This document shows positions 1 through 48,500 of a DNA stretch of 64,000 bases, in pieces (positions within the stretch are counted from its first letter, which is position 1; each line of letters starts with the position of its first letter). Position numbers and translations under genes: made by a program. The stretch is taken from contig BDGG01000004.1 in the NCBI GenBank assembly GCA_001949185.1, positions 3,107,267-3,171,266 of the forward strand. Direction: 5' to 3'. Origin of the DNA: Ramazzottius varieornatus. Its lineage: Eukaryota; Animalia; Tardigrada. The notes under the pieces are model-generated. The model saw only the letters and a program-made list of their open reading frames with translations, had not been told where the DNA came from and did not search any database.

Positions 1-1716
1 TGGTCATGATTTCAGGAGTGACCGCTGCAGTACATTTCTTGAGCTCCATGAGCTCGGAGAACTTGGAAAAGGTGGAAAGCTGATAAAAAAGATCTGCGGA
101 CCGATCACCAAATACGTTTCATCAGGTACTGCAGTCCTGCTTGACTTTTGGTCCACCTGTTTGATACGAATGTAATGTTCTGTTTCTACGTAGATCCTAA
201 GAGTTTGGAAGAGTACTCTTCCGCTCCGGGAAGAACGCTTCTGCTGACTTTCAATTCGAAGGAGGGAAATCAGATTTTGGGAAAGACCTCCGAGTGGATA
301 AGTGGCCGTTTTCAGTTTCGGAACGGTAAGTGATCACCAAACGATTTCTTTGGTCACTATGCAAAACATTTTTGCTCTCGACAACGTTTTGTGTAATCTG
401 TGGAGTTGTACACCTTTTAGATCGAATCATGGGAACAAAAGTGCTCAACACGGTCTGTGATGTATCCTACGAGGACGACGAGGGACTTGAACCACGAGCG
501 GGAGCCCTTACCGTCCGTGCCGGTGATAACGACGGCGAACCGTTTTGGCATTCTTCTAGTGCCACGGTCGAATGCCTTTACAACTTTAGCTCCAGGAAGA
601 ACCGTAGTATATCGGTGACCATAAACCACGGCATACTCGTCAAGTGAGTATGAAGCCCTTTGACAGGTTCGATTGCCTTATATTCCCAAATTTACACGCA
701 AATCTATTTTAGGCCAGGCGAAGAGTCGAGATATTGGCAGTGCAAGACAGAATGTGACAAAAGTGGGTGCCGGTGTTTGCTCGGAACGAAGAAGAAACAA
801 TTCGTCGCCCTCAACGAGATCTTCCACATATCCATCTTCAACCTGGCGGGTATAGAACTTTCCTGCCTGTGCGGAGACCTGACGGATCTCTTGCCTGTCA
901 GCGTCTTGAGCTCTGGAGGAGTATTAGTGCGGTACAACAAACTGGGTCTTCCATCAGACGACTCCAACGTGCAAGGGTTCACCGCTTCCTACAAATTCCG
1001 AGATCGCTTCTACGGTAATGTAACACCAAATTTCGGAGAAACCCCTTGTCGAATGCTTTTTCGTATGTTGATAGACTGTGCGCAGACTACGCGAAGCCAA
1101 GCACAAGGTATACTCTATGTCGCGTTGAAGAGGAACCTCTCATCGTCAGAATACGTCCATGTCCAGTGCGACTGGACAATTGAAGTGTCGTCCGAAAAAT
1201 TCCTCTCGATTGATGTACGGCTGCTGGACGCTCTATCCAAGGTCGCTGCTAACAAATCCGCTTCCGGTGGGTGTTTCTTACCATCTCGACACGTTACCTC
1301 CAAATGTCAGGCCGCTGGTCAACGCATGATTTCTCCAGGTTCTTCGTGCTCGGCTAAAAATACGGTGAAACTCTTCACTTCCCCGTCACAGCGCGCTAAA
1401 GATAAAGGGATTGAAATGTGCCAAAGTAACATGGTGACGGTGAACACCCATAAGCTCTCCATCAGGCTGACCGCTACTGGGCGACAGCTGAAACATCGCA
1501 TATTGTGGCGGGAAACTGACCCCAAAGCATCTGTCACTTCGTTATGCAATACATTAGGTAATAAAATGCACTAAATTCTCAGCGGCTGGTTCAGGAATGT
1601 GAATTGTACTGTTAACCTGTGGGCTCTTTTTTCCAGGCTGCCGGCTGGACTGGCCAATGCTAGTGTGCATCGCTGTCCCGGTTCTCTGGAGCTCTTTACA
1701 TGGTTTCAACTATTGA
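1..1716 (+). CDS. CUB-domain extracellular protein, 3' part (5' end outside window), multi-exon, with hydrophobic C-terminal tail (GPI-signal or TM-like)
   Basis: Exons ~1-125, 193-325, 421-643, ~712-1013, ~1076-1557 and 1638-1716 are bounded by GT-AG. CUB-like motifs: C-ST-FLELHE...LIKKICG, RTLLLTF, LCGD...VLSSGGVLVRY...QGFTASYKF, VQCDWTIEVSSEKFLSIDV. The last exon reads GCRLDWPMLVCIAVPVLWSSLHGFNY*. Confidence 0.7.
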
Positions 1717-2635
1717 GGTCACTCTTGTGCACTTCGGGAGACACCTCTGGACCAAATTCTATTGACCAAACGAAAAAGTTGTCAGTATTCTCAAATCTGT
1801 GATCTTGCTTTTGCGGCTTGCCTGACTGGGCGTCTTGTTGCTCAATAAATGATTTTTCGGTCCATCGTTGCTGTTGCTGTTCCTCCCCTTTCCGGTACAG
1901 TCTACGAACAAGGAAAGAAGAACTTACGATAAATTCAGTGTTCTGCCAAGGTTCACTGACTGAAGTGTGTGCTTTACGTTGAGTGCTTGCCGACCGGTAG
2001 AGAAGTGAGGAACTCCAGAGCGGAAATGACTCCGAAAAGGTTTTGACGTCAGTCCGTATCATCGTGTAATCTGTGTCATGCCATGCACGTAATGAACGTT
2101 CGGCCGTACACGCAGTAGGTAAGCAGCTCGCCCACACGGCGTCTACCGAACTGGCTCGCAAGCTAGACCAGATGTTTATCACAAGCGATCCCATTGAGCA
2201 GTAAACTCCGAAGTCTCATTGAAGTCTCTTGGACAAGATCTCATTACATGTCTTTCAGTCCTTGCCAATAGAATGAATCTAGATCTGGCCACCGAGGCAT
2301 TTCTTCAAGACTTCTGTCGGGCATAACAGAGCTTCTCACTTCACTCGGTAAGTCTCTGCTGTCAGTAGATCCTCGAAAGACTGGATGCCAGTTTCATCCC
2401 TCGCTACTCCACACCATTACCTTATCGTTTGACTTGACCATTTGGGAAGAACCGGATGGGTTCCGGATTAACGGGACATACTGAGCTGGATTCTCGAGCT
2501 GGATGCTGAGTTAAAGCGTGATTCGCGACAGGTAAAAAGCTAGCGTGCATGTCTTTGCAGGTATGGGAAGATTGGCTCTCGTGCCTTTCTGACTACGGTG
2601 CCCTCGTATGTCTCTTTATATGTTTGTCTTGCAGG

Positions 2636-3504
2636 ATGGGTCTACAACTGTCCCACCTGAAAGAGTGTCGCAAGCGCCATCGGGAGCCCAAGTTTCAGGT
2701 TGTCGCATACTGCAACGGTGTTCACCAAGGGATCGGGAAACTGCAGATAGCGGACGGCAAGATTGTCCTGTACCAGAAAGGCGTGGACAAGCTGGTCTGG
2801 CCGATCCCGTGTCTCCGTCGATACGGAAGCGATAAGCCGCACCTCTTCTCCTTCGAGAGCGGACGACGCTGCGAAACTGGCCCGGCCACATACACGTTCG
2901 AAATGAAGAACCCAGACGTCATTTTGGAAAAAGTGCGGCTGATTGCGGAAGAGATAAAGATGGCTGACGAGGAAGCTCGACGAAGCACGGGGACGATCCA
3001 TCAGAAAGCTGGTGAATGGGTTCCTCCTCTCCCACCACGTCCGGGAAGCGTTCCAGGACCTGCTAGACCTTACCAGAACTGTGACGAACATGGTAACGTT
3101 CTGCCGATGGTGAATGTGGAGGAAGTTTTCTACGCCCAGGTAATAGTCTATGATATCACCCTTTCGTCGATCAGATTTCACTTTGGACTGTTTTTCAGGT
3201 TCAAATTAACTCGGCAGCCTCTTCGGACAAGTCTACTCCACCGTCGGGGCTCTCGGGCCATCCAGACTACGACGTTCCCAAGTCTCCCCGAAGTATTTTC
3301 CAGCAGCCGCCGCCTACAGAGCTAAGGAGTTCGTCTTCATCTACGATGACGAAAAGTCCTTCTCCTGCTTCGTCGCGAGAAGATGTGACAGGAAATTTCA
3401 GTTCTCAAACGGTTGTTCACAAGAGTTGTCAGGAACCAGTGAGCTACACTACGATTGACCGTGCCAAGACGGAAGCCATTGCCAACCTTGGAGCTCGCTC
3501 ATGA
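2636..3504 (+). CDS. FRS2: FRS2/DOK-family IRS-type PTB adaptor protein (~269 aa, 2 coding exons 2636-3139 and 3199-3504)
   Basis: PTB signature WPIPCLRRYGSDKPHLFSFESGRRCETGPATYTF; N-terminal MGxxxS myristoylation-like start; YQN motif; C-terminal YTTIDRAKTEAI resembles the FRS2 SHP2-binding tail. Confidence 0.8.
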
Positions 3505-4080
3505 TTTCCGGATCTTCCAGAAATGTGAAGAAGAGGTCGTCCTGCATCAGGAGCTTGTGTCATTCCTTCCACTTTTCAATAGGTATTAAGTAATATATAT
3601 CTTTTTGTTATTAGCACTACCTTAACCATGATTGCACGATTTTTTGTTGAAAACTATGAGATAAAAATGGGTTTTTTGTTCACCGCATGATTTCTTACTG
3701 TATCCCTCTTGTTAGTTCCAAACCTCGTTCTTTAACTTTAGCTTTCCGCTTTGTGTTTCGCACGGTGTTGTTCGCCTGTTTCATTCTCTGATGTGACCGT
3801 AAGCGTGCCCTCTGGGACTCCTTAGTCCTTACTTTGTAGAGGTTTCTCAAAAGGTCGAAATACAAAATCCATCGAGTACGTTAATAACATTGAAACTGCG
3901 ATACTCTTTCCGATCGCATCCTTGTCGAAAGATCAATCAACCATGCCACTGATGCCAATGGTCTGCAACCATTCCAGCATGTCAAGATGCTTCTGCGTCT
4001 TTCTATTTGCTTCATGCAGGTTGCAGAACATCTTCCTGTGGACGACTTTCCTTCGTTTCTGTACCTAGACTAATAGCAAG

Positions 4081-5229
4081 ATGGCGTCTCAAGCAACGTT
4101 TGTCAAAGGACCCAAGGGAAGTTACGCCATACTGGATAAGAAGTATATGTTCGTCGTCAATCGCAAGGAGCCGCTGCAGAATGTCCAGTATTGGCGATGT
4201 CGGAGATTCCTCAAGAACAGCAAAGAAAAGAGCTGTCCTGCTTCTATCGTGATGGACATGGATGGATACGTCAAAAACACGTCCAAAGCTCTCCATAATC
4301 ATCCACCCGATCCGGAGGGCGTCCAGGCTACGATTGAAGCAGCCGAAGCATACGGTATGGTCACAACTGTATCTAGCACTGTCGTGCTCTCTTCAGTTTT
4401 CGCTCTGTACGTACCAAAAAGAATGAATTGGTGCTTATCGATTACAGACTCGGACGAAGAGCGACAGAAAAAACTCGACAAACTACTCGAAAAGGATGAG
4501 AAGAGAAAGAATAAACAACGCAAACAATCCGAAGAACGTACAACAAAGAACTTACCCAAGCTACCACCAAAAAGAACATATCAAACTCAGAAGGTGAAAG
4601 ATCAAGCAGCGATGCGACTAGAAACCGTGCTTGCTACACAGGAGCTGGAACAAGGTAAGTCATTCCGCGAAGTCGCTGCAATGTTGGGATATACAAAGAC
4701 GCTCGAAGCCAATCTCCACAAGGAATACAGACCTCCGACTCCTCCACTTCCGCCCAAGAAGAAACTCAAGCAGACACAGCGTCAACAAGAAGCCGAGGAC
4801 AAGAAGTTCGGCACTGGTCAGAACGAAGTCCTTGCTCGTTACGTTACCCAAATGTCTTACGACACTTCGAAGCAAATCTCAGAGTCTTTGAAGAACTTGG
4901 GCATCATGGAACTGACGCCGGCGCAAGTTGTGGGAAGGCTGCACACGTTAGGGTTCGAAAGAATCATAGAAACGAATGAGATTACAGGGAAGGGTGTTTA
5001 CCGTTGGTTTCATAGCAAGCCCAGCAAGCAGGAAGTCACTGCTACACAGGTCGTCGAGGCAGTGGCGGAACAGATATGCAAGAAGATGAAACCTATCCGT
5101 CCCAACCCGTTCCCTGATGGAGCTCCCAAGCCCACCCTTGCGTCAGAAGTACCATCAAGAGCCTCCAGACTTCTGGCTGCAACGCCAGTTCTTCCAAACA
5201 ATCCCATGCATATCCTTTTGCCTCAGTAG
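4081..5229 (+). CDS. FLYWCH zinc-finger protein with C-terminal Tc1/IS630-like bipartite HTH; probable 93-nt in-frame intron 4355-4447
   Basis: FLYWCH pattern FVKGPKGSYAILDKKYMF...QYWRCRR...CPASI...HNHPPD. HTH-like GKSFREVAAMLGYTKT and TSKQISESLKNLGIMELTPAQVVGRLHTLGF. The GTATGG...TTACAG intron removes an odd hydrophobic stretch. Confidence 0.7.
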   Translation: MASQATFVKGPKGSYAILDKKYMFVVNRKEPLQNVQYWRCRRFLKNSKEKSCPASIVMDMDGYVKNTSKALHNHPPDPEGVQATIEAAEAYGMVTTVSSTVVLSSVFALYVPKRMNWCLSITDSDEERQKKLDKLLEKDEKRKNKQRKQSEERTTKNLPKLPPKRTYQTQKVKDQAAMRLETVLATQELEQGKSFREVAAMLGYTKTLEANLHKEYRPPTPPLPPKKKLKQTQRQQEAEDKKFGTGQNEVLARYVTQMSYDTSKQISESLKNLGIMELTPAQVVGRLHTLGFERIIETNEITGKGVYRWFHSKPSKQEVTATQVVEAVAEQICKKMKPIRPNPFPDGAPKPTLASEVPSRASRLLAATPVLPNNPMHILLPQ

Positions 5230-40749: not shown

Positions 40750-41345
40750 TACATGTGCTATATGACATGATAGTTGATATGACCATGTAGTATATGTAGT
40801 ACATATACTCTATATATATTTAGTATATGTAGTATGTATATTATGTATGGTACGTACGATGGACGATGCGAACCCAGGGATGGGCATGCTTCCTCGTATG
40901 ATATGTTAGTGTGATATGCCTGAAACTACTGGTATATGATGCTGCAGTATGTACCGTAATATGTGAGTATGTACCGTAAGGCAATCTTGGGAAGGGTATG
41001 CTCCGGCTTATGATATGTCCGTATGATATGCCTGAAACTACTGGCATATGACATTGTAGTAGGTACAGTATGTGTAGGAGACGAGGACAGGGATGGGTAT
41101 ACCCAACGTATGATATGACCTTGTGATATGCGTGAAGTAGTGGTATGGAACACTGCGTATGATGCGTATCGAAGAAGGTGAGGACGGGAAAGGGTAGAGC
41201 ACCGTATGATATGTGCTTCTGATATGGGTGATTAACAGGCACAGCGGTACACCAGGGTTGAACAGTGATAGAGAGCGGTTCCGATATGATAGGGTTATCT
41301 GATATGGTATAAGCGCTGCGACACCCAGTGATAGAGAGCGGTTTC
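40750..41345. repeat. (G)TATGATATG-rich low-complexity or degenerate satellite
   Basis: Many GTATGATATG/GTGATATG units. Longer duplications: TGATATGCCTGAAACTACTGG x2 and CAGTGATAGAGAGCGGTT x2 (41263, 41326). Confidence 0.7.
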
Positions 41346-41446
41346 CGAAACTACTTACGAAGGTATGGGAGACAAGTGAAGCTTGGTCATTTGTAACCGA
41401 CTAATGTTTTTTGTGAAGTTGCGGGTCACAATGAAGTGCCACTTAT

Positions 41447-41991
41447 GATGCCCCGTCCCATCTTGATGCGCCGATGTCGTTCGGAAATTGTTAGCGTGGG
41501 ATCAGCTAACAAGTTTGGAACTCCAAATACAGTTGGAATTCCAAAAAGATCTACCGAGCTTCAAACTGCGAAACCGCTAACGCTGCCCGTCGTCATTCCT
41601 CAAGCTGTGAATGTTCCTGTTGGAAATCCAACTTCGGTTGGAGTTCCAACTGAGTCCGCAGTAAATCATCCCAAGACCTACTACCACGCGCATCGAGATA
41701 AGACTCGAGCGGCCAACTACATCCGTGCCACTCAGAAGTTCGTGACTTGGCGCGACAGCAGAAAAAGCAGACGTAGTTAACTCGGGAACAAGAGGACAAC
41801 GAGCGAAACTTCGTACGACTTCGTGAAAAGCGAGAGTTGGAAGACAAGCGAGCAAGAGAAGACAGAGATGTCGCAGATAGGTATGCTGCGGAAGACAGTC
41901 GTCGTGTTCTCGATCGTAAGCAAGAAGACTTAGATTTCGAGCAGCGAGCTCCTGACTACTGCGCCATGTATCGTGGTAAAGATCTTGTTTA
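41447..41991 (+). pseudogene. Disrupted passenger ORF convergent with the hAT transposase (Pro/Thr-rich N-part, charged coiled-coil C-part)
   Basis: ORF 41436-41780 contains VGIPK, VGNPT and VGVPT encoded by the palindromes. After a frameshift/stop another frame continues TREQEDNERNFVRLREKRELEDKRAREDRDVADRYAAEDSRRVLDRKQEDLDFEQR...LV*. Confidence 0.4.
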
Positions 41992-44902
41992 GAGTTTCTC
42001 TACTGGTTTAATCACAGTACGGGACGCGATTCTGCCCGGTCGGTCTTAGCATTACTGTATGGCTGATTGATGGTAGTCCTGTTCAGTCGAAACCTGCCCT
42101 GGTAAACGTTAGTACGGTACGGTTGTGGCCACGGAACAAGTCAAGTGTTATGCCCCTTGGCTTTTGGTTTCCATGTTTGATTGTTAGATGGCCCATAACT
42201 CTGTCGTGTTGACGACCGGACAGAATCGTGTCCTACAGTGTAAGTCCCTTCAGTTTTTCCTGTAGCACTTATGGCTCTTTGGTGTCACCGTTGATGCAGT
42301 ATTTTTGACGGTCTTTCTTTTTTTAATAAATACAACGGTAAATCGAAATTAAAGTAGAAAAATAACATTGGTGCGATGGAATAACACAGGATGGAATAGT
42401 TCATTGTACAGTAATAATTAGTAGTGGTTGGAATTCCAACGGTTCGAGATCCAACATCTTTCAGCAACAGTAATATTTAGCAGTTCGTCTAACAACAACT
42501 TTCTGTTCCAATCTTTCACCACCAAGTCGATTCTTTTTACCGGCTGTAGCATCACCTGCTGTCGAAAACAGTCTTTCCGATGGCGCCGAAGAGCATTGTA
42601 TTACCAGAACATCCAAAGCGAAAGCACTCAGCTCAGGATACTCGGGTGTGTTTTTTGTAACCAGAATTTGCTTGGTTCGCTCTTCTGTGAGAAGGCGGCT
42701 GCAGTTGTTGAGAGTATGTAAGAGTATAACTGACGTTCTATAGGCAACTGCTGTTGTTCTGCTGTAGTATTCACTAGAGCACGAGCCAGAAGTTCCGTGA
42801 GGTACGAAAACTCGTCGTCGTCACCGACGACCTTGGACTGAGGTTGATCGTGATCTAGAAACAAAGACGATGATTTGGAATTCCAACATTTGGAACTCCA
42901 AAGAGAGTTTAGTCACCTGTATTCGTGGAACCACAAGAATCATCGTTGAAAGTCGAATTCCACTTTTTGTCGTACTGCAGAACACCTTTCATTGCAATGG
43001 TTTGCTCCTTCTCCGTCAGAAGTCGGCGTAGCGCTGGATGTAACAGAGTTGCTACCATCATGATGGGTTCGAACATTAAGTGTTCAGGGTTCAACCATAC
43101 ACCGAAGCGTACCACCATGTCGACTTGCATCTCTACATAGAAAGGATTAGATAGTGCTGTTTTGATTCGTTATCGAGAATTACATACTTCTAATCAGCGG
43201 GAAAAAGGGATCCGCAATTCCATAGGAGCCCAGGTCTAACTCTTCAGCCAAAGTCTCCATATGGGATAGATGAGCCACAATGTCTTTCAGATGCGGTATG
43301 ATTTTATGGATGGTGCTTTCCTTTTCAGCTTGCATTCGAACCGTAATCTGAGAAGTACAGCATGTTTCCGTTGGATTTCCAACAGTTGGAAATCCAACAA
43401 TTTGCGATGTTCACTTACCAGCTTGAACTTGCAAAGGAACTTGACAATTCCTTTCAGCACTAGCCATTCACCTTGAGATAAGTTAGGTACTTTGACTAGT
43501 TTCTCAACCAAGATTATCGTTTCTACAGCAGCCTGAATTTTGACCATTCTTTCCGCCATCAGAAGAGTGCTGGACCATCGTGTCTTGTTGTCTGAGATGA
43601 GCTTCAGACTGCCAGTCCGCGCCATAAGTGCAGCGACGGCGGTGTGAGAATGGCCGAAGCTATTTACAATCGCGCGAACTTTCGCCATGACATCCTCGAT
43701 CGGTGGACTCTTCTCGAACAACTTGACCACGAGCTGTAGAGTGTGCAAGAAGCGCGGATATCGGGAGTACTCGGTGAAAAGGTTTGAAGCTTCCAGCTCG
43801 AAAGCATCAACCTCTGCCGCCATCTCATCAACTTCCTCGTCGTCTTCCAGTGGTTCCTCCTCATCCAGCATACGCTGGACCATCGCTTCTTCTATCACCT
43901 GCAACTCGTCTTCTTCCGTAATACATTCTTCTAACTTCTTATCGTACAGCTTGAATGCGGCAATCATGTTGGATGCGTTGTCCGTCCTGACGACTGATAC
44001 TTTTTCTGGATTGATACCCCATTTCTCCAGTTCTTGTTTGAAGAGTTCGTACACATTCTTGGCTTTATGTGGGGGCGGAAATGAGACACAGCTCAGGTAG
44101 AGGTGGTGCCTTACATGGGTATTCTTGTTCGCAAAGTGTGCTGTGATTCCAAAGAACGCTTCGGTCATCCCCTTCTTCGTCCAGATATCTGGAAAACGAC
44201 ATGTTGGAGGTCCAACAGTCGGAATTCCAACGTGAACAGTGAAACTGTTTCAGACCTGTTGTAAAGCCGATTCTTCCTGCATTCTTCAATAAATCTTTGA
44301 TATTTTGACGAAGCTGTCGTTCGATAGAATCCATAGATGCACGTACGAGCTTCGACGTGGGATTTGGCGCCCTGGGGTCCAAATGGTAAATCAGATCTTT
44401 GAAGCTATCATCTTCGACTCCATTGATAGTCATTGACGGTGATCGCAGAACGTAAAGGCCAAATTTTTTCAGAATGCTGTCATACCTGCAAGTGTAAAGA
44501 CCGGTAAACCATTGTAAAGAACGATAAGCTTATTCATGTATAGAGATTTGGATTTGAACAATGCGCTTGCCGTCGATTCTCCTTGCTGTATGGTTTTCTT
44601 GCTTGGGCCATCTCTGCCAACGTCGTCTGGTGATGTTTTTCGCCGCCCTTCTCCTTCTGAGCTTTCTGCTTCTCACACATCGCTAGAAACTCGTTGTTGG
44701 CCACTGGGTGCTTCATCAGATGAAGCCGATCGTTTCCTGTGTTCATTCCTTTACGCTTGGTCGAGCATCCTTCCGCGAGACAGACCGACTTATCCTCCAA
44801 CTCATGATGTCTGAAAAAGGTCCATATCGGTGAATCTTTCGGCCTTCCTGCTCCTGACTTCTTTGTCTTGACAGTTGGAGCTCCAACAGTTGGATCTCCA
44901 AC
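41514..44902. repeat. Dispersed doublets of the 14-bp palindrome GTTGGA-NN-TCCAAC (14 copies)
   Basis: Copy starts: 41514/41532, 41619/41637, 42427/42442, 42874/42889, 43370/43385, 44203/44218, 44874/44889. Confidence 0.9.
42013..42240. mobile_element. ~228 bp MITE with ~30 bp imperfect CAC-terminated TIRs
   Basis: Left end CACAGTACGGGACGCGATTCTGCCCGGTCG versus reverse complement of the right end CACTGTAGGACACGATTCTGTCCGGTCG. Confidence 0.65.
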
Positions 44903-45082
44903 GCACGTGTCGCTCGCGGTAGTTGGAGAAGGCGAAGGGGGAGAATTTTCCGCCGGTCCGGTCAAGTCGACCGTCGTCCCAGGCTGAGTCCTCCTCTCCT
45001 TTATAGCCTGCTTCTTCGGCTTGGTGGAGCTTGGCCCTGTCTGACTTTTTCGCTTCTGACTATTTTTCGTGGGATTGGTCAT
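42461..45082 (-). mobile_element. hAT-superfamily transposase gene with BED zinc finger, 5 introns, nearly intact (one frameshift)
   Basis: BED finger SPIWTFF...CLAEGC...NTGNDRLHLMKHP; catalytic TTDIWT and RTDNASNM; FLHTLQLVV; TRWSSTLLMAERM; ATLLHP; dimerisation domain FW...YPELSAFALDVLVIQCSSAPSERLFSTAG...NRL. A -1 frameshift lies in the T6 run at ~42651. Confidence 0.92.
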
Positions 45083-45513
45083 GGCTGATGCTAAAATTAT
45101 GTGGCCGAGGACCAATAATACCAATTGAAGTACGAACGGTAGGAAAAGAAGAGCAAACTGCGAGTCCTAAATCAAGTCGAATAATCAATGCACCAACTTC
45201 ACGGTATGAGGTAGATTGCGTAATCGAGTACGTCAATTTGACTGAGGCTGAAATTTAAAATCAGCGCTCCGTATCCATCTCTTGTACTGATTAACCAGCT
45301 CTCGTCCGGGATAATATTTACCAAGGGATTTTCGTGGTACAATTCACTGTGGATTTGCTAGGCATCTTGTCATAATTAAAATTCGAAGCCCAGCTCTTCC
45401 AAATTTTAATTATTTTAATTGCTGCAAGTACGGATTTTAATTACCTATTTTACTATTGACTTCTGGGTCTAATTTTACTGTAATTTTACTATATAGTAAA
45501 ATTCGTCGTCTCG

Positions 45514-48500
45514 ATGACTCCAGCATCGCAGGCCACTGTACCTGTTACTCGGTCCCGCGGCAAAGCTGGCGTGAAGCGAAAGGTTGCGCATCGTCCATCC
45601 TCTGGACAGCGCGAACAAACTCAAGTCGCTGAAGGATCCAATACGAAAAACTGGAAGATAAGTTCGACCAAGTCCTCACTGCGCTTACTACCCTCATTAG
45701 TCAGGTGAGTGCGTCCCTCGGTGCCGATAAACAAACAGTGGCGCCACCCGAGACTACAGCTACTGTTTCCGATGGTGTGTCTCCCTCATCAGTTGCAAGG
45801 TCCGTACGTCAGCCGGTGGAGACGATTGCTATCTCAAATTCACCTACGGTTATCGTAGTCATTTCGAAGCTCGCTGAACCGGATCGTTCTTTCCATTTTG
45901 AGCCAATTTCTGACGCCACTGACAAACTTATGCAGGACCGCCGCGCATTCGTTAATCTTGGGTTGATCCTACCGCAGAAGTATGACCTGGACGTGTCCTC
46001 TGACGTTGATTCTGTCCTCAGCAATTTTGCTGGCGCTCTACAAAAGTACGCGGGTAAGGATCGGAAACGAAAGATCGACAGTTTCACTACCTGGTTGGAT
46101 GCCTTCATCATTTCATCAAACTTGTGGCTTGAGTACGATCAACGTTCCCGAATGATAATGAAGCATGCTGGTTCGACTGATCTCGAATGGCGTCGAGAAG
46201 ACCCGGACCTCAAAGCCGCGGTGGTTCGTGGTAACACCCGGGTGGTACTACCAACCTCGCACGTTTCCAGAGAGACCAAGTGCTACAACTGCAGTCAGTA
46301 CGGTCACATCGCTGTTGGTTAGGAGTAACTATAGAGCTCGTTTACGAACAGATATGCATGCATTCGTTGGAATGATGGTAGTTGTAGCGAACCTTGTTTA
46401 CAACGTCAAAGTCACATTTGCGATAGATGTATGCAGAAGGGCCACCGACGTGATACCTGTCCCGATAATGATACTGGGTAAAGTCTTCATCTCTTTGACA
46501 CTCGAACGCTTTGCTTTAGTGTTAAAAGAATACCCCGATCAGGATTTCGTTACGTACTTTGTGGATGGGTTGACAAATGGATTTCACATTGGTTATCGCG
46601 GTCCTGAGTTTCCTCGCGAAACGCCAAACGTTCGAACAGCATTCGACTACATCCACATACTCAGGAAATATGTCGCCAAGGCGACTGCCGGCAAGCATAC
46701 AGTAGGACCTTTTGATGAGCCGCCGTTCGCAAATAGTGTCGTTTCTTCTATTGGAGTGCGAGTGAACAAGGACAGTGCTTCGCGCTTGATAATGGACCTA
46801 CCACGTCCCGAAAAGCAATCCGTCAATGACTTCGTGACTCGGGCCGACTGAAGTCTCACTATCATTGGGGTGGACGACGCTATTCGGGTTCTGAGCGAAT
46901 ATGGCCCGGGTGCCCTGATGGCAAAATTAGACCTTAAGGGAGCGTTCAGACTCATCCGGTTCACATGAATGACTGGCATTACATATGTTTTAAGATGGAT
47001 GGGAAGTATTTCGACGTGGTTCTACCTTTCGAGGCACGTTTTTCACCAGCATTGTTTGACGACATGTCTAAGCTGCTTTAGTAATTCGCCAGACAATATG
47101 GTCACGCCAAACATATTACATTATATTGATGATTTTTGGTGGGCTGGTCCACCTGACGATCCTGAGTGTCAGCGAGTTCTTAATCTCTTTCGTTATTTCT
47201 GCAACTATCTGGAGGTGTCAATGGCCGAAGAAAAAACTGACAGTCCTACCACGAAGCTAGCGTTTCTCGGCATAGAACTCGACACCGTCAATCAAATGAT
47301 AGCTGTTCCAGAAGGCAAAGGAGTTAATGGATGAGCTGACCGTTTTCCATCGGGAACCTGGTGCAACGAAGAACGAGCTCCAGAGTTTGATTGGTAAACT
47401 CAGCTTCGCCACTAAATGTTTGCCAGCTGGTCGAATGTTTGCCAGCTGGTCGAATGTTTGCCAGCTGGTCGAATGTTTGCCAGCTGGTCGAATGTGTTCT
47501 TCAAGTTGACTAAGGATTTCAAGCTAGACATAAAGTGGTGGCAGAGGTTCTTACCCGGGTGGAATGGGACATGCATTTTTCTTCAACCTGATGAAACGTC
47601 AGCAACGTCGATGCATTTGTTTACAGATGCAGCTGAATTTATTGGCTGTGTCTGGATTGGCTGTGTCTGGAAACGAGTGATTTTTCTTGCCGTGGCTTAG
47701 TGAGACCCAACTTCCCATTGCTTTATTCGAAATGTTGCCAGTTTATATAGCTTGTGTTGTTTGGGGGTAAACTGGCAAAGGTAAAGGCTATTGTTCCATT
47801 CGGACAATATGGCTGTGGTCTCGGCGTGGTGGAAACTGTCAACTCCGCATAATGGCATCATGGAGTTGATACGTCAGATGCAGTTCACAGCAGCTACGAA
47901 TAATTTCAACTTACGCATCACATATATAGCCAGATAACTCAACTGCGGATTCCGTCTCTGGATGCAATTGGGAACAGTTCCGATCACTACACCCGACAGC
48001 CCTAGAACAGCCAGTGAAAGTCGAATGCGATCTCGATTTTCTGAAACGAGCACTGCAGTCCAATCATGTTCCGCGGTCAGAGGACACGACAGTGTTTCGC
48101 GATGGCTCGCAGATAGACACCTTGTAGCTTCCACCCGAAGAGTATACAATGTTGGACTACGACACTACTTGTCTTTCTGCTTGAAATACTCCGAAGGTTT
48201 CATTCCTTCAACTAAAGAAACCATCCAGCGATTTGCTGCTCATCTGTACTGTAAAGGGGCTGAGTCTGGTAGCTGCAAAAGTATACATCTCTTCGGTACG
48301 ATCGCAACATGTAATAGAGGGGTACGGAGACCCCTCAACAGATGATGTGAGACTCAGAATGACCATGAAAGGTTGGAATCGATCTGCAGTCGATCAACAC
48401 AGCAGCAGAGAACCCGTCACAAACGACGTACTAAGGAAACTGAAAGACCTGTTACGCGACTCTTCTGAGTTTTCTCGACAAGCACATGTTATGGTCAGCA

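What the first reader, a model, noticed from the sequence alone, without database searches (positions are those of the whole stretch)
41514..44902. Operator-like palindrome doublets (GTTGGA-NN-TCCAAC x2) threaded through a hAT transposase gene, including three of its introns
Seen directly: seven tandem pairs of a 14-bp palindrome with a variable 2-nt centre. Five pairs have a fixed 15-bp start-to-start spacing: in the first coding exon (read as VGDPTVGAPT, 44874-44902), inside three short introns (44203-44231, 43370-43398, 42874-42902) and immediately after the stop codon (42427-42455). Two pairs with 18-bp spacing sit in the convergent passenger ORF (41514-41545, 41619-41650). Conserved arms, a free spacer, fixed pairing and ~0.45-0.8 kb spacing between most doublets look like binding sites for a dimeric protein. 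Known hAT BED-finger binding repeats are normally confined to subterminal regions, not hidden in introns. Inference: a self-recognition system (autoregulation, transpososome looping, anti-silencing or boundary sites bound by the transposase or the passenger protein), or introns that arose from insertion of the doublet unit. I saw no such doublet elsewhere in the window.
Basis: partly seen in the sequence, partly recalled or inferred. Interest (0 to 1): 0.85.

Follow-up and report, generated by a model that had tools for sequence, protein, structure and literature searches.

The report
Conserved palindrome pairs inside tardigrade hAT transposon
A decayed copy of a hAT "cut-and-paste" transposon in the tardigrade Ramazzottius varieornatus carries seven pairs of a 14-base palindrome in its exons, introns and second gene. 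A distantly related lineage keeps the same pairs at the same places, so they were probably selected protein-binding sites, though the binder is unknown.

Summary
The window has 13 matches to GTTGGANNTCCAAC at one mismatch or fewer, against 0.14 expected, arranged as seven pairs at the stated coordinates.

The genome is Ramazzottius varieornatus. All 40 exact-core pairs in its 55.8 Mb (control 0) lie in three repeat families:
- hAT lineage A, which includes this window: 24 pairs.
- A diverged hAT lineage B and relatives: 4 pairs.
- An uncharacterised family E: 12 pairs.

The window element (41344-45515) is a truncated, frameshifted copy of a ~5.25 kb hAT transposon with a 20-bp TIR (terminal inverted repeat) and 8-bp target-site duplications. 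Three pairs sit centrally in real short introns, supported by homology-abutting exons and one spliced contig.

Among lineage-A copies the arms decay at the neutral rate, as expected for dead copies. Between lineages A and B, all seven pairs sit at homologous positions. Arm cores are 84% identical and flanks 56%, against 51% for random sequence. That indicates long-term selection on the DNA motif.

A single palindrome also lies 56 bp inside the 5' end of every B-type element examined, including non-autonomous ones.

Best reading: symmetric-dimer DNA-binding sites, probably for the transposase N-terminal BED-type zinc-finger region, used for regulation or assembly. Binding is untested. An intron-seeding mobile unit is not supported.

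The parts
41344..45515 (-). Truncated copy of hAT lineage-A transposon. It equals positions 1019-5165 of the ~5.25 kb full element L017:484-5733, and both termini are missing.
44874..44902 (.). Pair 1 (15-bp spacing) in transposase exon 1, read as VGDPTVGAPT, just upstream of the AT-hook-like GAGRP and the CxxC...HxxxH finger.
44203..44231 (.). Pair 2 in the centre of intron A.
44189..44255 (-). Intron A, 67 nt, GT..AG. It splits the conserved hAT motif ..TT|DIWTKK. Exons 2 and 3 abut on full-length relatives (P0004 residues 193|195).
43370..43398 (.). Pair 3 in the centre of intron B. The 29-mer is a perfect palindrome except for its central base.
43348..43418 (-). Intron B, 71 nt, GT..AG. 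Precise removal is seen in one contig of run X2, and the flanking exons abut on P0004 (444|447).
42874..42902 (.). Pair 4 in the centre of intron C.
42855..42916 (-). Intron C, 62 nt, GT..AG. The model rests on reading frame and homology.
42427..42455 (.). Pair 5, 5 nt downstream of the transposase stop codon (42461-42463).
41619..41650 (.). Pair 6 (18-bp spacing, gap TTCG) in the passenger ORF, read as VGNPTSVGVPT.
41514..41545 (.). Pair 7 (18-bp spacing) in the passenger ORF, read as FGTPNTVGIP.
44571..45082 (-). Transposase exon 1: low-complexity N-terminus, pair 1, and a BED-like CxxC...HxxxH region. The 3' boundary is inferred from homology, and the donor is GC.
44256..44485 (-). Transposase exon 2.
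43419..44188 (-). Transposase exon 3, the catalytic core. It gives 2620 HMMER hits and is 44% identical to a 711-aa Paramacrobiotus protein.
43188..43347 (-). Transposase exon 4. Intron 4 follows at 43133-43187 (55 nt) and holds no pair.
42917..43132 (-). Transposase exon 5.
42461..42854 (-). Transposase exon 6 with the hAT C-terminal dimerisation domain. This copy has a frameshift near 42651; another copy lacks 4 bases there.
41436..41992 (+). Convergent passenger gene, frameshifted near 41755 in this copy. It has a disordered N-terminus carrying pairs 6 and 7, then one long helix. It is conserved in lineage B.

Best explanation
The pairs are cis-acting DNA sites of an old, now inactive hAT transposon clade of Ramazzottius varieornatus. 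Each 14-bp unit is an inverted repeat of TTGGA around a free 2-nt centre, with a lineage-specific outer base, and is the kind of site a symmetric protein dimer reads. Two units are set side by side.

Seven such pairs were kept by selection at fixed places along the body of the autonomous element. They sit only where sequence is tolerant:
- the centre of three short introns;
- just after the stop codon;
- disordered coding linkers, always in the harmless V-G-x-P-T reading frame.

The most likely binder is the element's own transposase, through its N-terminal BED-type zinc-finger region acting as a pair, as shown for Hermes. A single copy of the same palindrome sits in the conserved 5' subterminal region of every B-type element examined, including non-autonomous ones.

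Deletion derivatives without any pair still show target-site duplications. The internal pairs are therefore inferred to regulate or organise the full-length element rather than to be needed for the cutting chemistry. Possible roles are autoregulatory roadblock or titration, or compaction of a 5-kb element so that its ends can meet.

Shown: specificity, positional conservation and the selection signature. Inferred: protein binding, the identity of the binder and the regulatory role.
For: 1. Enrichment and specificity. There are 13 hits against 0.14 expected in the window and 72 exact motifs against 0 for the control in the genome. All 40 exact-core pairs lie in three repeat families and none in unique sequence. 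Contigs C5-C8 hold other hAT families at ~40% identity but have no exact motif.

2. It is a bona fide hAT transposon. It has a 20-bp TIR starting CAGTG, 8-bp TSDs at three checked insertions (L017, L030, L032), and internal-deletion derivatives. The Dimer_Tnp_hAT domain scores E 6.6e-10.

3. Selection between lineages. Lineage B (C2:3.05 Mb) has all 7 pairs in the same order and at homologous sites. Arm cores are 118/140 identical and flanks 236/420, against a random level of 0.51. Lineage B has 17 core hits at <=2 mismatches, where about 2 are expected from my own arithmetic. The intron-A pair is also kept in four further B-like copies with unrelated intron flanks.

4. The majority base over 8 lineage-A copies restores 14 of 14 perfect palindromes.

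5. Each unit is self-symmetric, the centre is free, and the gap between the two units varies (1, 4 and, in family E, 2-7 nt). The outer base shifts in concert, G..C in A and T..A in B. This fits a protein reading double-stranded half-sites and co-evolving with them.

6. Of 25 exact B-type TIRs, 12 have TTGGANNTCC exactly 56 bp from the tip, plus 3 with a 1-mismatch TIR. That is essentially one end of every element, across two subfamilies whose intervening sequence differs.

7. Hermes BED domains bind a quasi-palindromic pair of subterminal repeats cooperatively, on the left end only (PMC10368747).

8. Third codon positions are fixed in the coding instances, so the constraint is on DNA and not on the peptide.
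Against: - No binding experiment or DNA-protein model was possible.
- Pfam does not call a BED finger in exon 1 even at E<=10.
- In lineage A the subterminal regions are not enriched for half-sites. They are rich in a different motif, TAGTAAAAT-like, and the only near-terminal site has 2 mismatches.
- The terminal palindrome is on opposite ends in A and B relative to the transposase gene.
- Family E carries the same pairs. No hAT core, dimerisation domain, BED finger or A/B-type TIR was found there in the rows shown, and the TIR listing was cut off before contig C16. The reader of the motif could therefore be something other than this transposase.
- The pair also folds into a stable 13-bp hairpin, so an RNA or cruciform role is not excluded.
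- Lineage B evidence rests mainly on one decayed copy.
Confidence: 0.45

Rival explanations
1. The pairs act as nucleic-acid structures. They could be a ~13-bp hairpin in the transposase and passenger transcripts, or a cruciform in DNA. Such a structure might control splicing of the minimal introns (regulated intron retention), control transcript stability or translation, or feed small-RNA production.
For: - All seven pairs lie in transcribed DNA of the two convergent genes.
- Folds give -12 to -22 kcal/mol with z-scores of -3.4 to -4.2 for six of seven.
- Intron B folds almost end to end like a mirtron-type hairpin.
- A variable gap between the units is what a hairpin loop tolerates; one gap is C(UUCG)G.
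- The ancestral G..T outer pair in the B lineage is a G-U wobble on the sense strand.
- Most contigs keep the introns and one shows intron B spliced.
Against: - A long hairpin does not need each half to be self-palindromic, yet every unit is.
- The two 2-nt centres do not covary to keep pairing. Only 2 of 7 pairs are fully complementary, and intron A and the post-stop pair are fully mismatched.
- A 13-bp stem is short for Dicer-type processing.
- The same palindrome occurs as a single unit next to the TIR of non-autonomous B-type elements, where a splicing role makes no sense.
- There is no Rfam match.
Confidence: 0.2
2. The sites are protein-binding sites, but the reader is not the transposase. 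It could be the passenger protein, a coiled-coil dimer, or a host factor such as an insulator or enhancer protein that the element exploits.
For: - The passenger gene is found only in lineages that carry the pairs. It is conserved between A and B at the protein level.
- It is predicted as one 94-residue helix with mean pLDDT 81.
- It passes the homodimer test: score 0.60 against a best control of 0.00. The mark was reached by 21 of 30 proteins solved as pairs of one chain and 0 of 23 solved as single chains. On eukaryotes it was 17 of 29, but only 1 of the 7 with no older solved relative, against 0 of 30 single chains. Partner pLDDT was at least 87 and the runs agreed in 100% of contacts.
- Family E has the pairs without detectable hAT parts.
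Against: - The predicted dimer is antiparallel (contacts 82-82, 60-104, 49-115). Its two basic N-terminal segments would lie ~100 A apart, unlike a bZIP reading one palindrome.
- The passenger has no DNA-binding domain hit, no fold match and no relatives outside this species.
- A host factor's site would be expected in host regulatory DNA, but no pair lies outside the three repeat families.
Confidence: 0.15
3. The pair is a small mobile or self-copying palindromic unit that inserted repeatedly, introner- or MITE-like, and seeded the three introns.
For: - The unit is open in all six frames, and 15- and 18-bp spacings preserve frame.
- The pairs occupy the centre of minimal introns.
- Two pairs (41514/41532 and 42874/42889) share the same two unit variants.
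Against: - Positions are inherited, not scattered: 7 of 7 are shared by lineages A and B.
- No copy lies in host genes or unique DNA.
- The sequences between splice sites and pair are unrelated between introns.
- Four of seven pairs are not intronic, and two of five introns have none.
- Metagenome hits to the pattern are ordinary 15-bp tandem repeats in unrelated contigs with no hAT similarity.
Confidence: 0.05
4. It is a peptide repeat (V-G-x-P-T) or a chance microrepeat with no DNA-level meaning.
For: All coding instances are read in the VGxPT frame. The intron A and B pairs are in that frame relative to the next exon in both lineages.
Against: - Third codon positions are invariant.
- Five of the fourteen palindrome units in effect lie outside coding sequence, in introns and after the stop.
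- None of the 150 best hAT relatives from other organisms has the peptide pair.
- Chance is excluded by shuffles and the reversed control.
Confidence: 0.03

Closest known systems
Hermes (hAT) subterminal repeats bound by BED zinc-finger domains (PMC10368747)
   Same: Both are hAT elements. Short motifs arranged as a quasi-palindrome are bound cooperatively by two BED domains, and binding is asymmetric, on one transposon end only. Here one palindrome sits at a fixed distance inside one end of B-type elements.
   Different: In Hermes the sites are confined to the first few hundred bp of the ends and the motif is different (AAGT-type). Here seven paired sites are spread at 0.45-0.83 kb intervals (apart from the two passenger-ORF pairs, ~105 bp apart) through exons, introns and a second gene. 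The subterminal regions of lineage A are dominated by another motif. Binding here is not shown.
Phage Mu internal activation sequence / operator, and P-element internal transposase/repressor sites (from my own knowledge)
   Same: Element-internal sites far from the ends are bound by the element's own transposase or repressor. They serve regulation and/or transpososome assembly.
   Different: Those are single clusters near a promoter or one end. They are not an array running through coding exons and introns, and they belong to unrelated transposase families.
En/Spm TnpA 12-bp motifs in tail-to-tail pairs (from my own knowledge)
   Same: Inverted pairs of a short motif are read by an element-encoded second protein, and the element encodes two proteins.
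   Different: TnpA sites are subterminal, En/Spm is a CACTA element, and TnpA is produced by alternative splicing rather than from a convergent gene.
Introners / intron-generating MITEs and mirtrons (from my own knowledge)
   Same: Both involve short introns with a palindromic core. Intron B folds into a hairpin over nearly its whole length.
   Different: There is no dispersal into host genes, no shared intron flanks, no TSD-like intron boundaries, and no small-RNA evidence.

Membership tests
hAT superfamily DNA transposon | 8-bp target-site duplication | tested here: met
   L017 CATCACAC, L030 GTCTTTTT and L032 GTTAAGAC flank the termini on both sides.
hAT superfamily DNA transposon | Short terminal inverted repeats beginning (C/T)AG | tested here: met
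   A 20-bp TIR, CAGTGTTATTCTACTAATGG, is present at both ends of >10 copies. The window copy itself lacks both termini.
hAT superfamily DNA transposon | Transposase with hAT C-terminal dimerisation domain and RNase-H-like core homologous to hAT transposases | tested here: met
   PF05699 scores E 6.6e-10 on the last exon. Exon 3 gives 2620 HMMER hits, including 700-aa hAT-type proteins of other tardigrades. The exons are colinear with them.
hAT superfamily DNA transposon | N-terminal BED zinc finger | tested here: inconclusive
   Exon 1 shows a CxxC...HxxxH pattern and aligns with the N-terminus of the Hypsibius relative at 41% identity, E 7e-8. Pfam zf-BED gives no hit even at E<=10.
BED-bound subterminal repeats of hAT elements (Hermes type) | Motif repeated and concentrated in the subterminal few hundred bp | tested here: not met
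   In lineage A the half-site density is 6.7 per kb in the left 300 bp and 3.3 per kb in the right 300 bp, against 9.1 per kb internally. The subterminal regions are rich in TAGTAAAAT-like words instead. Lineage B has one copy at bp 56-65 of one end in 15 elements.
BED-bound subterminal repeats of hAT elements (Hermes type) | Direct binding by the transposase BED domain | not testable with these tools
   No protein-DNA prediction or assay was available.
Introner / intron-generating transposon | Many near-identical introns dispersed in unrelated host genes | tested here: not met
   All 40 exact-core pairs are in three repeat families and none in unique sequence. Intron flanks are unrelated.
Mirtron / pre-miRNA-like intron | Whole intron forms a hairpin with paired ends, and small RNAs derive from it | tested here: inconclusive
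   Intron B pairs nearly end to end, but introns A and C do not. No small-RNA data could be examined.
bZIP-type dimeric DNA binder (for the passenger protein) | Basic region followed by a parallel leucine-zipper dimer, with a bZIP profile match | tested here: not met
   There is no Pfam hit at E<=10 and no fold match. The predicted dimer is antiparallel.

The most novel reading that the evidence does not exclude
An element-wide array of paired palindromic sites, hidden in introns, a 3' UTR and tolerant coding linkers, is read by the hAT transposase's own BED region or its passenger protein. It would serve as a built-in autoregulatory or condensing scaffold for a long autonomous transposon. This would be a mode of self-recognition not described for eukaryotic cut-and-paste elements, and it would be shared with a second, apparently unrelated repeat family (E) in the same genome.
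Probability: 0.3. Interest if true: 0.75.

Novelty: new variant of a known kind. Interest (0 to 1): 0.6.

Why it matters
Cis-requirements of hAT elements are thought to lie in the terminal few hundred bases. Here a short symmetric motif has been kept by selection at seven internal positions, including inside three introns, while the surrounding intron sequence was randomised.

That is a clean natural signature of function for non-coding DNA inside a transposon. It also gives a directly testable site-and-protein pair:
- an intact 170-aa N-terminal region and a 14-bp site;
- an organism with almost no transposon biochemistry.

If the sites regulate transposase output or compact the element, they would explain how a 5-kb autonomous element copes with length-dependent loss of mobility or with overproduction. 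They would also be a new design element for hAT-based vectors. If they turn out to be RNA hairpins controlling minimal-intron splicing, that would be a P-element-like control reached by another route.

Tried and rejected
All classes decay alike (arms 3.1%, centres 2.5%, flanks 3.8%, exon 3 2.7%). The test is uninformative because inserted copies are dead.
- **Rfam.** Nothing relevant.
- **Literature search for the motif.** No relevant paper. The tardigrade TE curation paper does not mention it.
- **Pfam on the exons.** Only the dimerisation domain was called.
- **Passenger protein.** It has no relatives outside the species, no Atlas lead and no PDB fold match.
- **JGI metagenome scan for the pair pattern.** It returned 14 contigs, mostly ordinary 15-bp tandem repeats, with no hAT similarity.
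- **VGxPT pair in the best hAT relatives.** None of the 150 best relatives from other organisms has it.
- **Half-site enrichment in the lineage-A subterminal regions.** Not found.
- **Deletion breakpoints.** I looked informally for clustering at the pairs. There was no clear pattern, apart from two breakpoints near intron B.
- **RNA evidence.** The runs are of guessed type and kept as contigs. Only one low-depth contig shows intron B spliced. The other joints match genomic deletion variants.

Tools and steps not available:
Family E and the more distant hAT families could therefore not be read.
The Paramacrobiotus and Hypsibius loci could therefore not be inspected for introns or pairs.
- The spliced transposase was never joined. 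All searches were made exon by exon, by reference.
Full report
**Observation.** A search for GTTGGANNTCCAAC with up to one mismatch finds 13 sites in the 64 kb window, where dinucleotide-preserving shuffles give 0.14. Twelve lie between 41532 and 44902. With the 12-bp core TTGGANNTCCAA all 14 units are seen, arranged as seven pairs. Five pairs have 15-bp start-to-start spacing: 44874, 44203, 43370, 42874 and 42427. Two have 18-bp spacing: 41619 and 41514. No other pair exists in the window.

**Whose genome, and how specific the motif is.** The assembly has 55.8 Mb in 200 contigs. Near-identical proteins in the public collection are named RvY_... of Ramazzottius varieornatus, so this is the tardigrade genome.
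- Genome-wide there are 72 exact 14-mers and none for the reversed control. About 3 are expected from base counting (my arithmetic).
- There are 31 pairs at 15-bp spacing with up to 2 mismatches, against 0 for the control.
- There are 40 exact-core pairs with any gap of 0-30, against 0 for the control.
- Sorting those 40 by place against the DNA search gives 24 in copies of the window's element (lineage A). Four are in diverged relatives (lineage B and L037-type). Twelve are in a third multi-copy family, E, at C1:1.61 Mb, C1:7.08 Mb, C3:2.88 Mb, C16:0.45 Mb and C15:0.74 Mb.
- None is in unique sequence.
- Contigs C5-C8 hold several other hAT families about 40% identical in protein but have no exact motif.

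**The element.**
- Copies about 92% identical exist on C13, C10, C1, C3, C2 and C11.
- Comparing their flanks shows that the full element is about 5.25 kb (L017:484-5733). It has a 20-bp TIR (terminal inverted repeat) CAGTGTTATTCTACTAATGG and 8-bp target-site duplications at three checked insertions.
- Many copies are internal-deletion derivatives. Some have no pair at all and still have perfect target-site duplications (L030, L032).
- The window copy covers only element positions 1019-5165. Both termini are missing. On the right it abuts an ORF with a CCHC knuckle.
- It also carries a 4-base difference near 42651 and a 1-base difference near 41755 relative to other copies, and these break both reading frames.
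- Every other lineage-A exon 3 found has stops or is fragmentary, so the family looks extinct.

**Gene model.** I searched exon by exon, by reference, and did not join the exons into a spliced protein. The transposase lies on the minus strand.
- The six open pieces are colinear with full-length relatives from Paramacrobiotus (711 aa, 44% identical over exon 3) and Hypsibius (736 aa).
- Exon 2 maps to residues 119-193 of P0004, exon 3 to 195-444 and exon 4 to 447-489.
- The 67 nt at 44189-44255 and the 71 nt at 43348-43418 therefore have no counterpart in the protein. They are GT..AG introns, and the first splits the conserved ..TT|DIWT.. motif.
- One contig of run X2 shows the precise removal of 43348-43418. 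The other joints in that output match genomic deletion variants seen.
- Most contigs keep the introns. The runs' type is only guessed, so expression is weakly supported.
- The five introns are:
  - intron 1, 85 nt, GC donor inferred from homology, no pair;
  - intron A, 67 nt, with a pair;
  - intron B, 71 nt, with a pair;
  - intron 4, 55 nt, no pair;
  - intron C, 62 nt, with a pair.
- The last exon carries Dimer_Tnp_hAT at E 6.6e-10. The stop is at 42461-42463, 5 nt before pair 5.

**The second gene.** The convergent + strand ORF (41436-41992, broken in this copy) is intact over 116 codons in L017.
- It has relatives only in this species.
- It is conserved in lineage B, especially the C-terminal half.
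- It is predicted as a disordered N-terminus carrying pairs 6 and 7, followed by a single 94-residue helix with mean pLDDT 81.
- A two-copy prediction passed the test:
  - The score was 0.60 against a best control of 0.00.
  - The mark was reached by 21 of 30 proteins solved as pairs of one chain and 0 of 23 solved as single chains.
  - On eukaryotes it was 17 of 29, but only 1 of the 7 with no older solved relative, against 0 of 30 single chains.
  - Partner pLDDT was at least 87 and the runs agreed in 100% of contacts.
- The contacts (82-82, 60-104, 49-115) describe an antiparallel coiled coil. This is unlike a bZIP sitting on one palindrome.
- It has no domain or fold match.

**Is the motif under selection?**
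- Among eight aligned lineage-A copies, deviation from the majority base is 3.1% in arms, 2.5% in centres, 3.8% in the 40-nt flanks, 3.0% elsewhere and 2.7% in exon 3.
- Everything decays alike, the transposase included. That is what dead insertions do, so this comparison cannot test function.
- The majority base restores 14 of 14 perfect palindromes: 12 with outer G..C and 2 with T..A.

The informative comparison is between lineages.
- Lineage B (C2:3047856-3052781, TIR CAGTGTTGTTCCGATTATTG) aligns with A only in coding parts, at 65-72% identity.
- It nevertheless has a pair at each of the seven homologous places in the same order. These are exon 1 before the finger, introns A, B and C, after the stop, and twice in the passenger gene, the first again with 18-bp spacing.
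- Arm cores are 118/140 identical between A and this decayed B copy. The 30-nt flanks are 236/420 identical, indistinguishable from random pairs at 0.51.
- Four more B-like copies keep the intron-A pair between unrelated intron flanks.
- Lineage B has 17 core hits at two or fewer mismatches in 4.9 kb, where about 2 are expected (my arithmetic), and 13 of them fall in the seven pairs.
- The motif has therefore been maintained while the intron sequence around it was randomised.

**What kind of site it is.**
- Each unit is itself symmetric, with a free 2-nt centre.
- The two units of a pair are separated by 1 nt or 4 nt in lineages A and B. In family E the gaps between exact cores correspond to 2, 3, 4 and 7 nt between 14-mers.
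- The outer base is G..C in A but mostly T..A in B: 10 of 14 on each side, read.
- In coding DNA the motif is always read as (V/F)-G-x-P-(T/N) with fixed third positions. The constraint is therefore on nucleotides, placed in the frame that does least harm.
- Self-symmetry of each unit, a free centre and a lineage-wide shift of the outer base are what a symmetric protein dimer reading double-stranded half-sites would produce.
- A long hairpin would need only that unit 2 complement unit 1. It would also predict covariation of the two centres, which is absent in most pairs.
- Still, the pair does fold into a 13-bp stem with z-scores from -3.4 to -4.2 for six of seven, and intron B pairs nearly end to end. 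An RNA or cruciform role stays open.

**Link to the transposition machinery.**
- In lineage B a single palindrome (TTGGAATTCCGA) lies 56 bp inside the 5' end.
- A pattern search finds TTGGANNTCC at exactly that distance in 15 elements. Twelve of these are among the 25 exact B-type TIRs, which is about one end per element. They span two subfamilies whose intervening 35 nt differ at about nine positions.
- Non-autonomous elements keep mainly what transposition needs in cis, so this ties the palindrome to end recognition.
- It parallels Hermes, where two BED domains bind a quasi-palindromic pair of subterminal repeats cooperatively, and only on the left end (PMC10368747).
- The parallel is imperfect:
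  - In lineage A the only near-terminal site has two mismatches and lies on the other end.
  - Half-sites are not enriched subterminally.
  - The subterminal regions are dominated by a TAGTAAAAT-like word.
  - Pfam does not call a BED finger in exon 1, although a CxxC...HxxxH pattern and similarity to the Hypsibius N-terminus are present.

**Most likely mechanism.** The pairs are binding sites for an element-encoded dimeric reader, most probably the transposase N-terminal region. They are spread through the autonomous element at 0.45-0.83 kb intervals and tucked into positions that tolerate them. Derivatives without pairs carry target-site duplications, so the pairs are not needed for the chemistry. 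I infer a regulatory or architectural role, such as a roadblock or titration feedback on the two convergent genes, or compaction of a long element. I put this at 0.45. The alternatives are:
- structural RNA or DNA: 0.2;
- another reader (passenger protein or host factor, favoured by family E): 0.15;
- an intron-seeding mobile unit: 0.05;
- a peptide repeat or chance: 0.03.

**Unexplained.**
- Family E carries four pairs per about 2 kb with odd gaps. None of the searches with hAT exon 3, PF05699, zf-BED or the passenger protein hit it, and no A/B-type TIR appeared there in the listed rows, though that listing stopped before contig C16. I could not read it.
- The intron-A and intron-B pairs are in the VGxPT frame with the following exon in both lineages, despite indels of 3 and 12 nt. 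The intron-C pair is not. This may be chance.

**Novelty.** Internal, selected, paired palindromes running through exons and introns of a eukaryotic cut-and-paste transposon are not something I could find described. The nearest known things are subterminal BED sites of hAT elements and the internal operator/enhancer of phage Mu. I class it as a new variant of a known kind, of moderate to high interest, with the binder and function still to be shown.

Noticed in passing
G000 C1:7076890-7078841; C16:451073-452424; C1:1610586-1612574; C3:2876061-2878049; C15:738851: A third multi-copy family (E) carries up to four pairs of the same palindrome, 580-740 bp apart, with start-to-start spacings of 21, 18, 16 and 17 bp. 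Searches with hAT exon 3, PF05699, zf-BED and the passenger protein did not hit these loci, and no A/B-type TIR appeared near them in the listed rows, though that listing stopped before C16. The sequence could not be fetched.
   Followed up: partly
window 44189-44255 and 43348-43418; L036:1700-1790; C2:3.05 Mb copy: In both hAT lineages the pairs in introns A and B are in the V-G-x-P-T frame relative to the downstream exon. The distance to the exon differs by 3 and 12 nt between lineages. Intron C does not follow this. It may be chance, or a hint of an isoform that reads in from the intron.
   Followed up: partly
window 41633-41636: The 4-nt gap of pair 6 is TTCG flanked by C and G, so on the passenger sense strand it is a C(UUCG)G tetraloop capping the 13-bp stem.
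   Followed up: no
window 45516-46851: The hAT copy is cut off at 45515 by sequence encoding a gag-like ORF with a CCHC zinc knuckle (45705-46322, weak Pfam hit), followed by a further ORF. This is probably a retroelement insertion.
   Followed up: partly
window 40800-41343: The left break of the hAT copy abuts a stretch rich in repeats of GTATGATATG-like words. The phrase CAGTGATAGAGAGCGGTT occurs twice there (about 41262 and 41326). Tandem Repeats Finder does not call it.
   Followed up: no
genome-wide: The B-type TIR CAGTGTTGTTCCGATTATTG is far more common (25 exact, dozens with 1-2 mismatches) than B-type transposase remnants. Lineage B has therefore spawned many non-autonomous elements of at least two subfamilies.
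   Followed up: partly
C2:3.05 Mb copy (merged L040/L038/L044, positions 1992-1999) and L022: Two independent internal deletions end at or within about 25 bp of the intron-B pair. In the B copy the junction is directly at the first unit.
   Followed up: no
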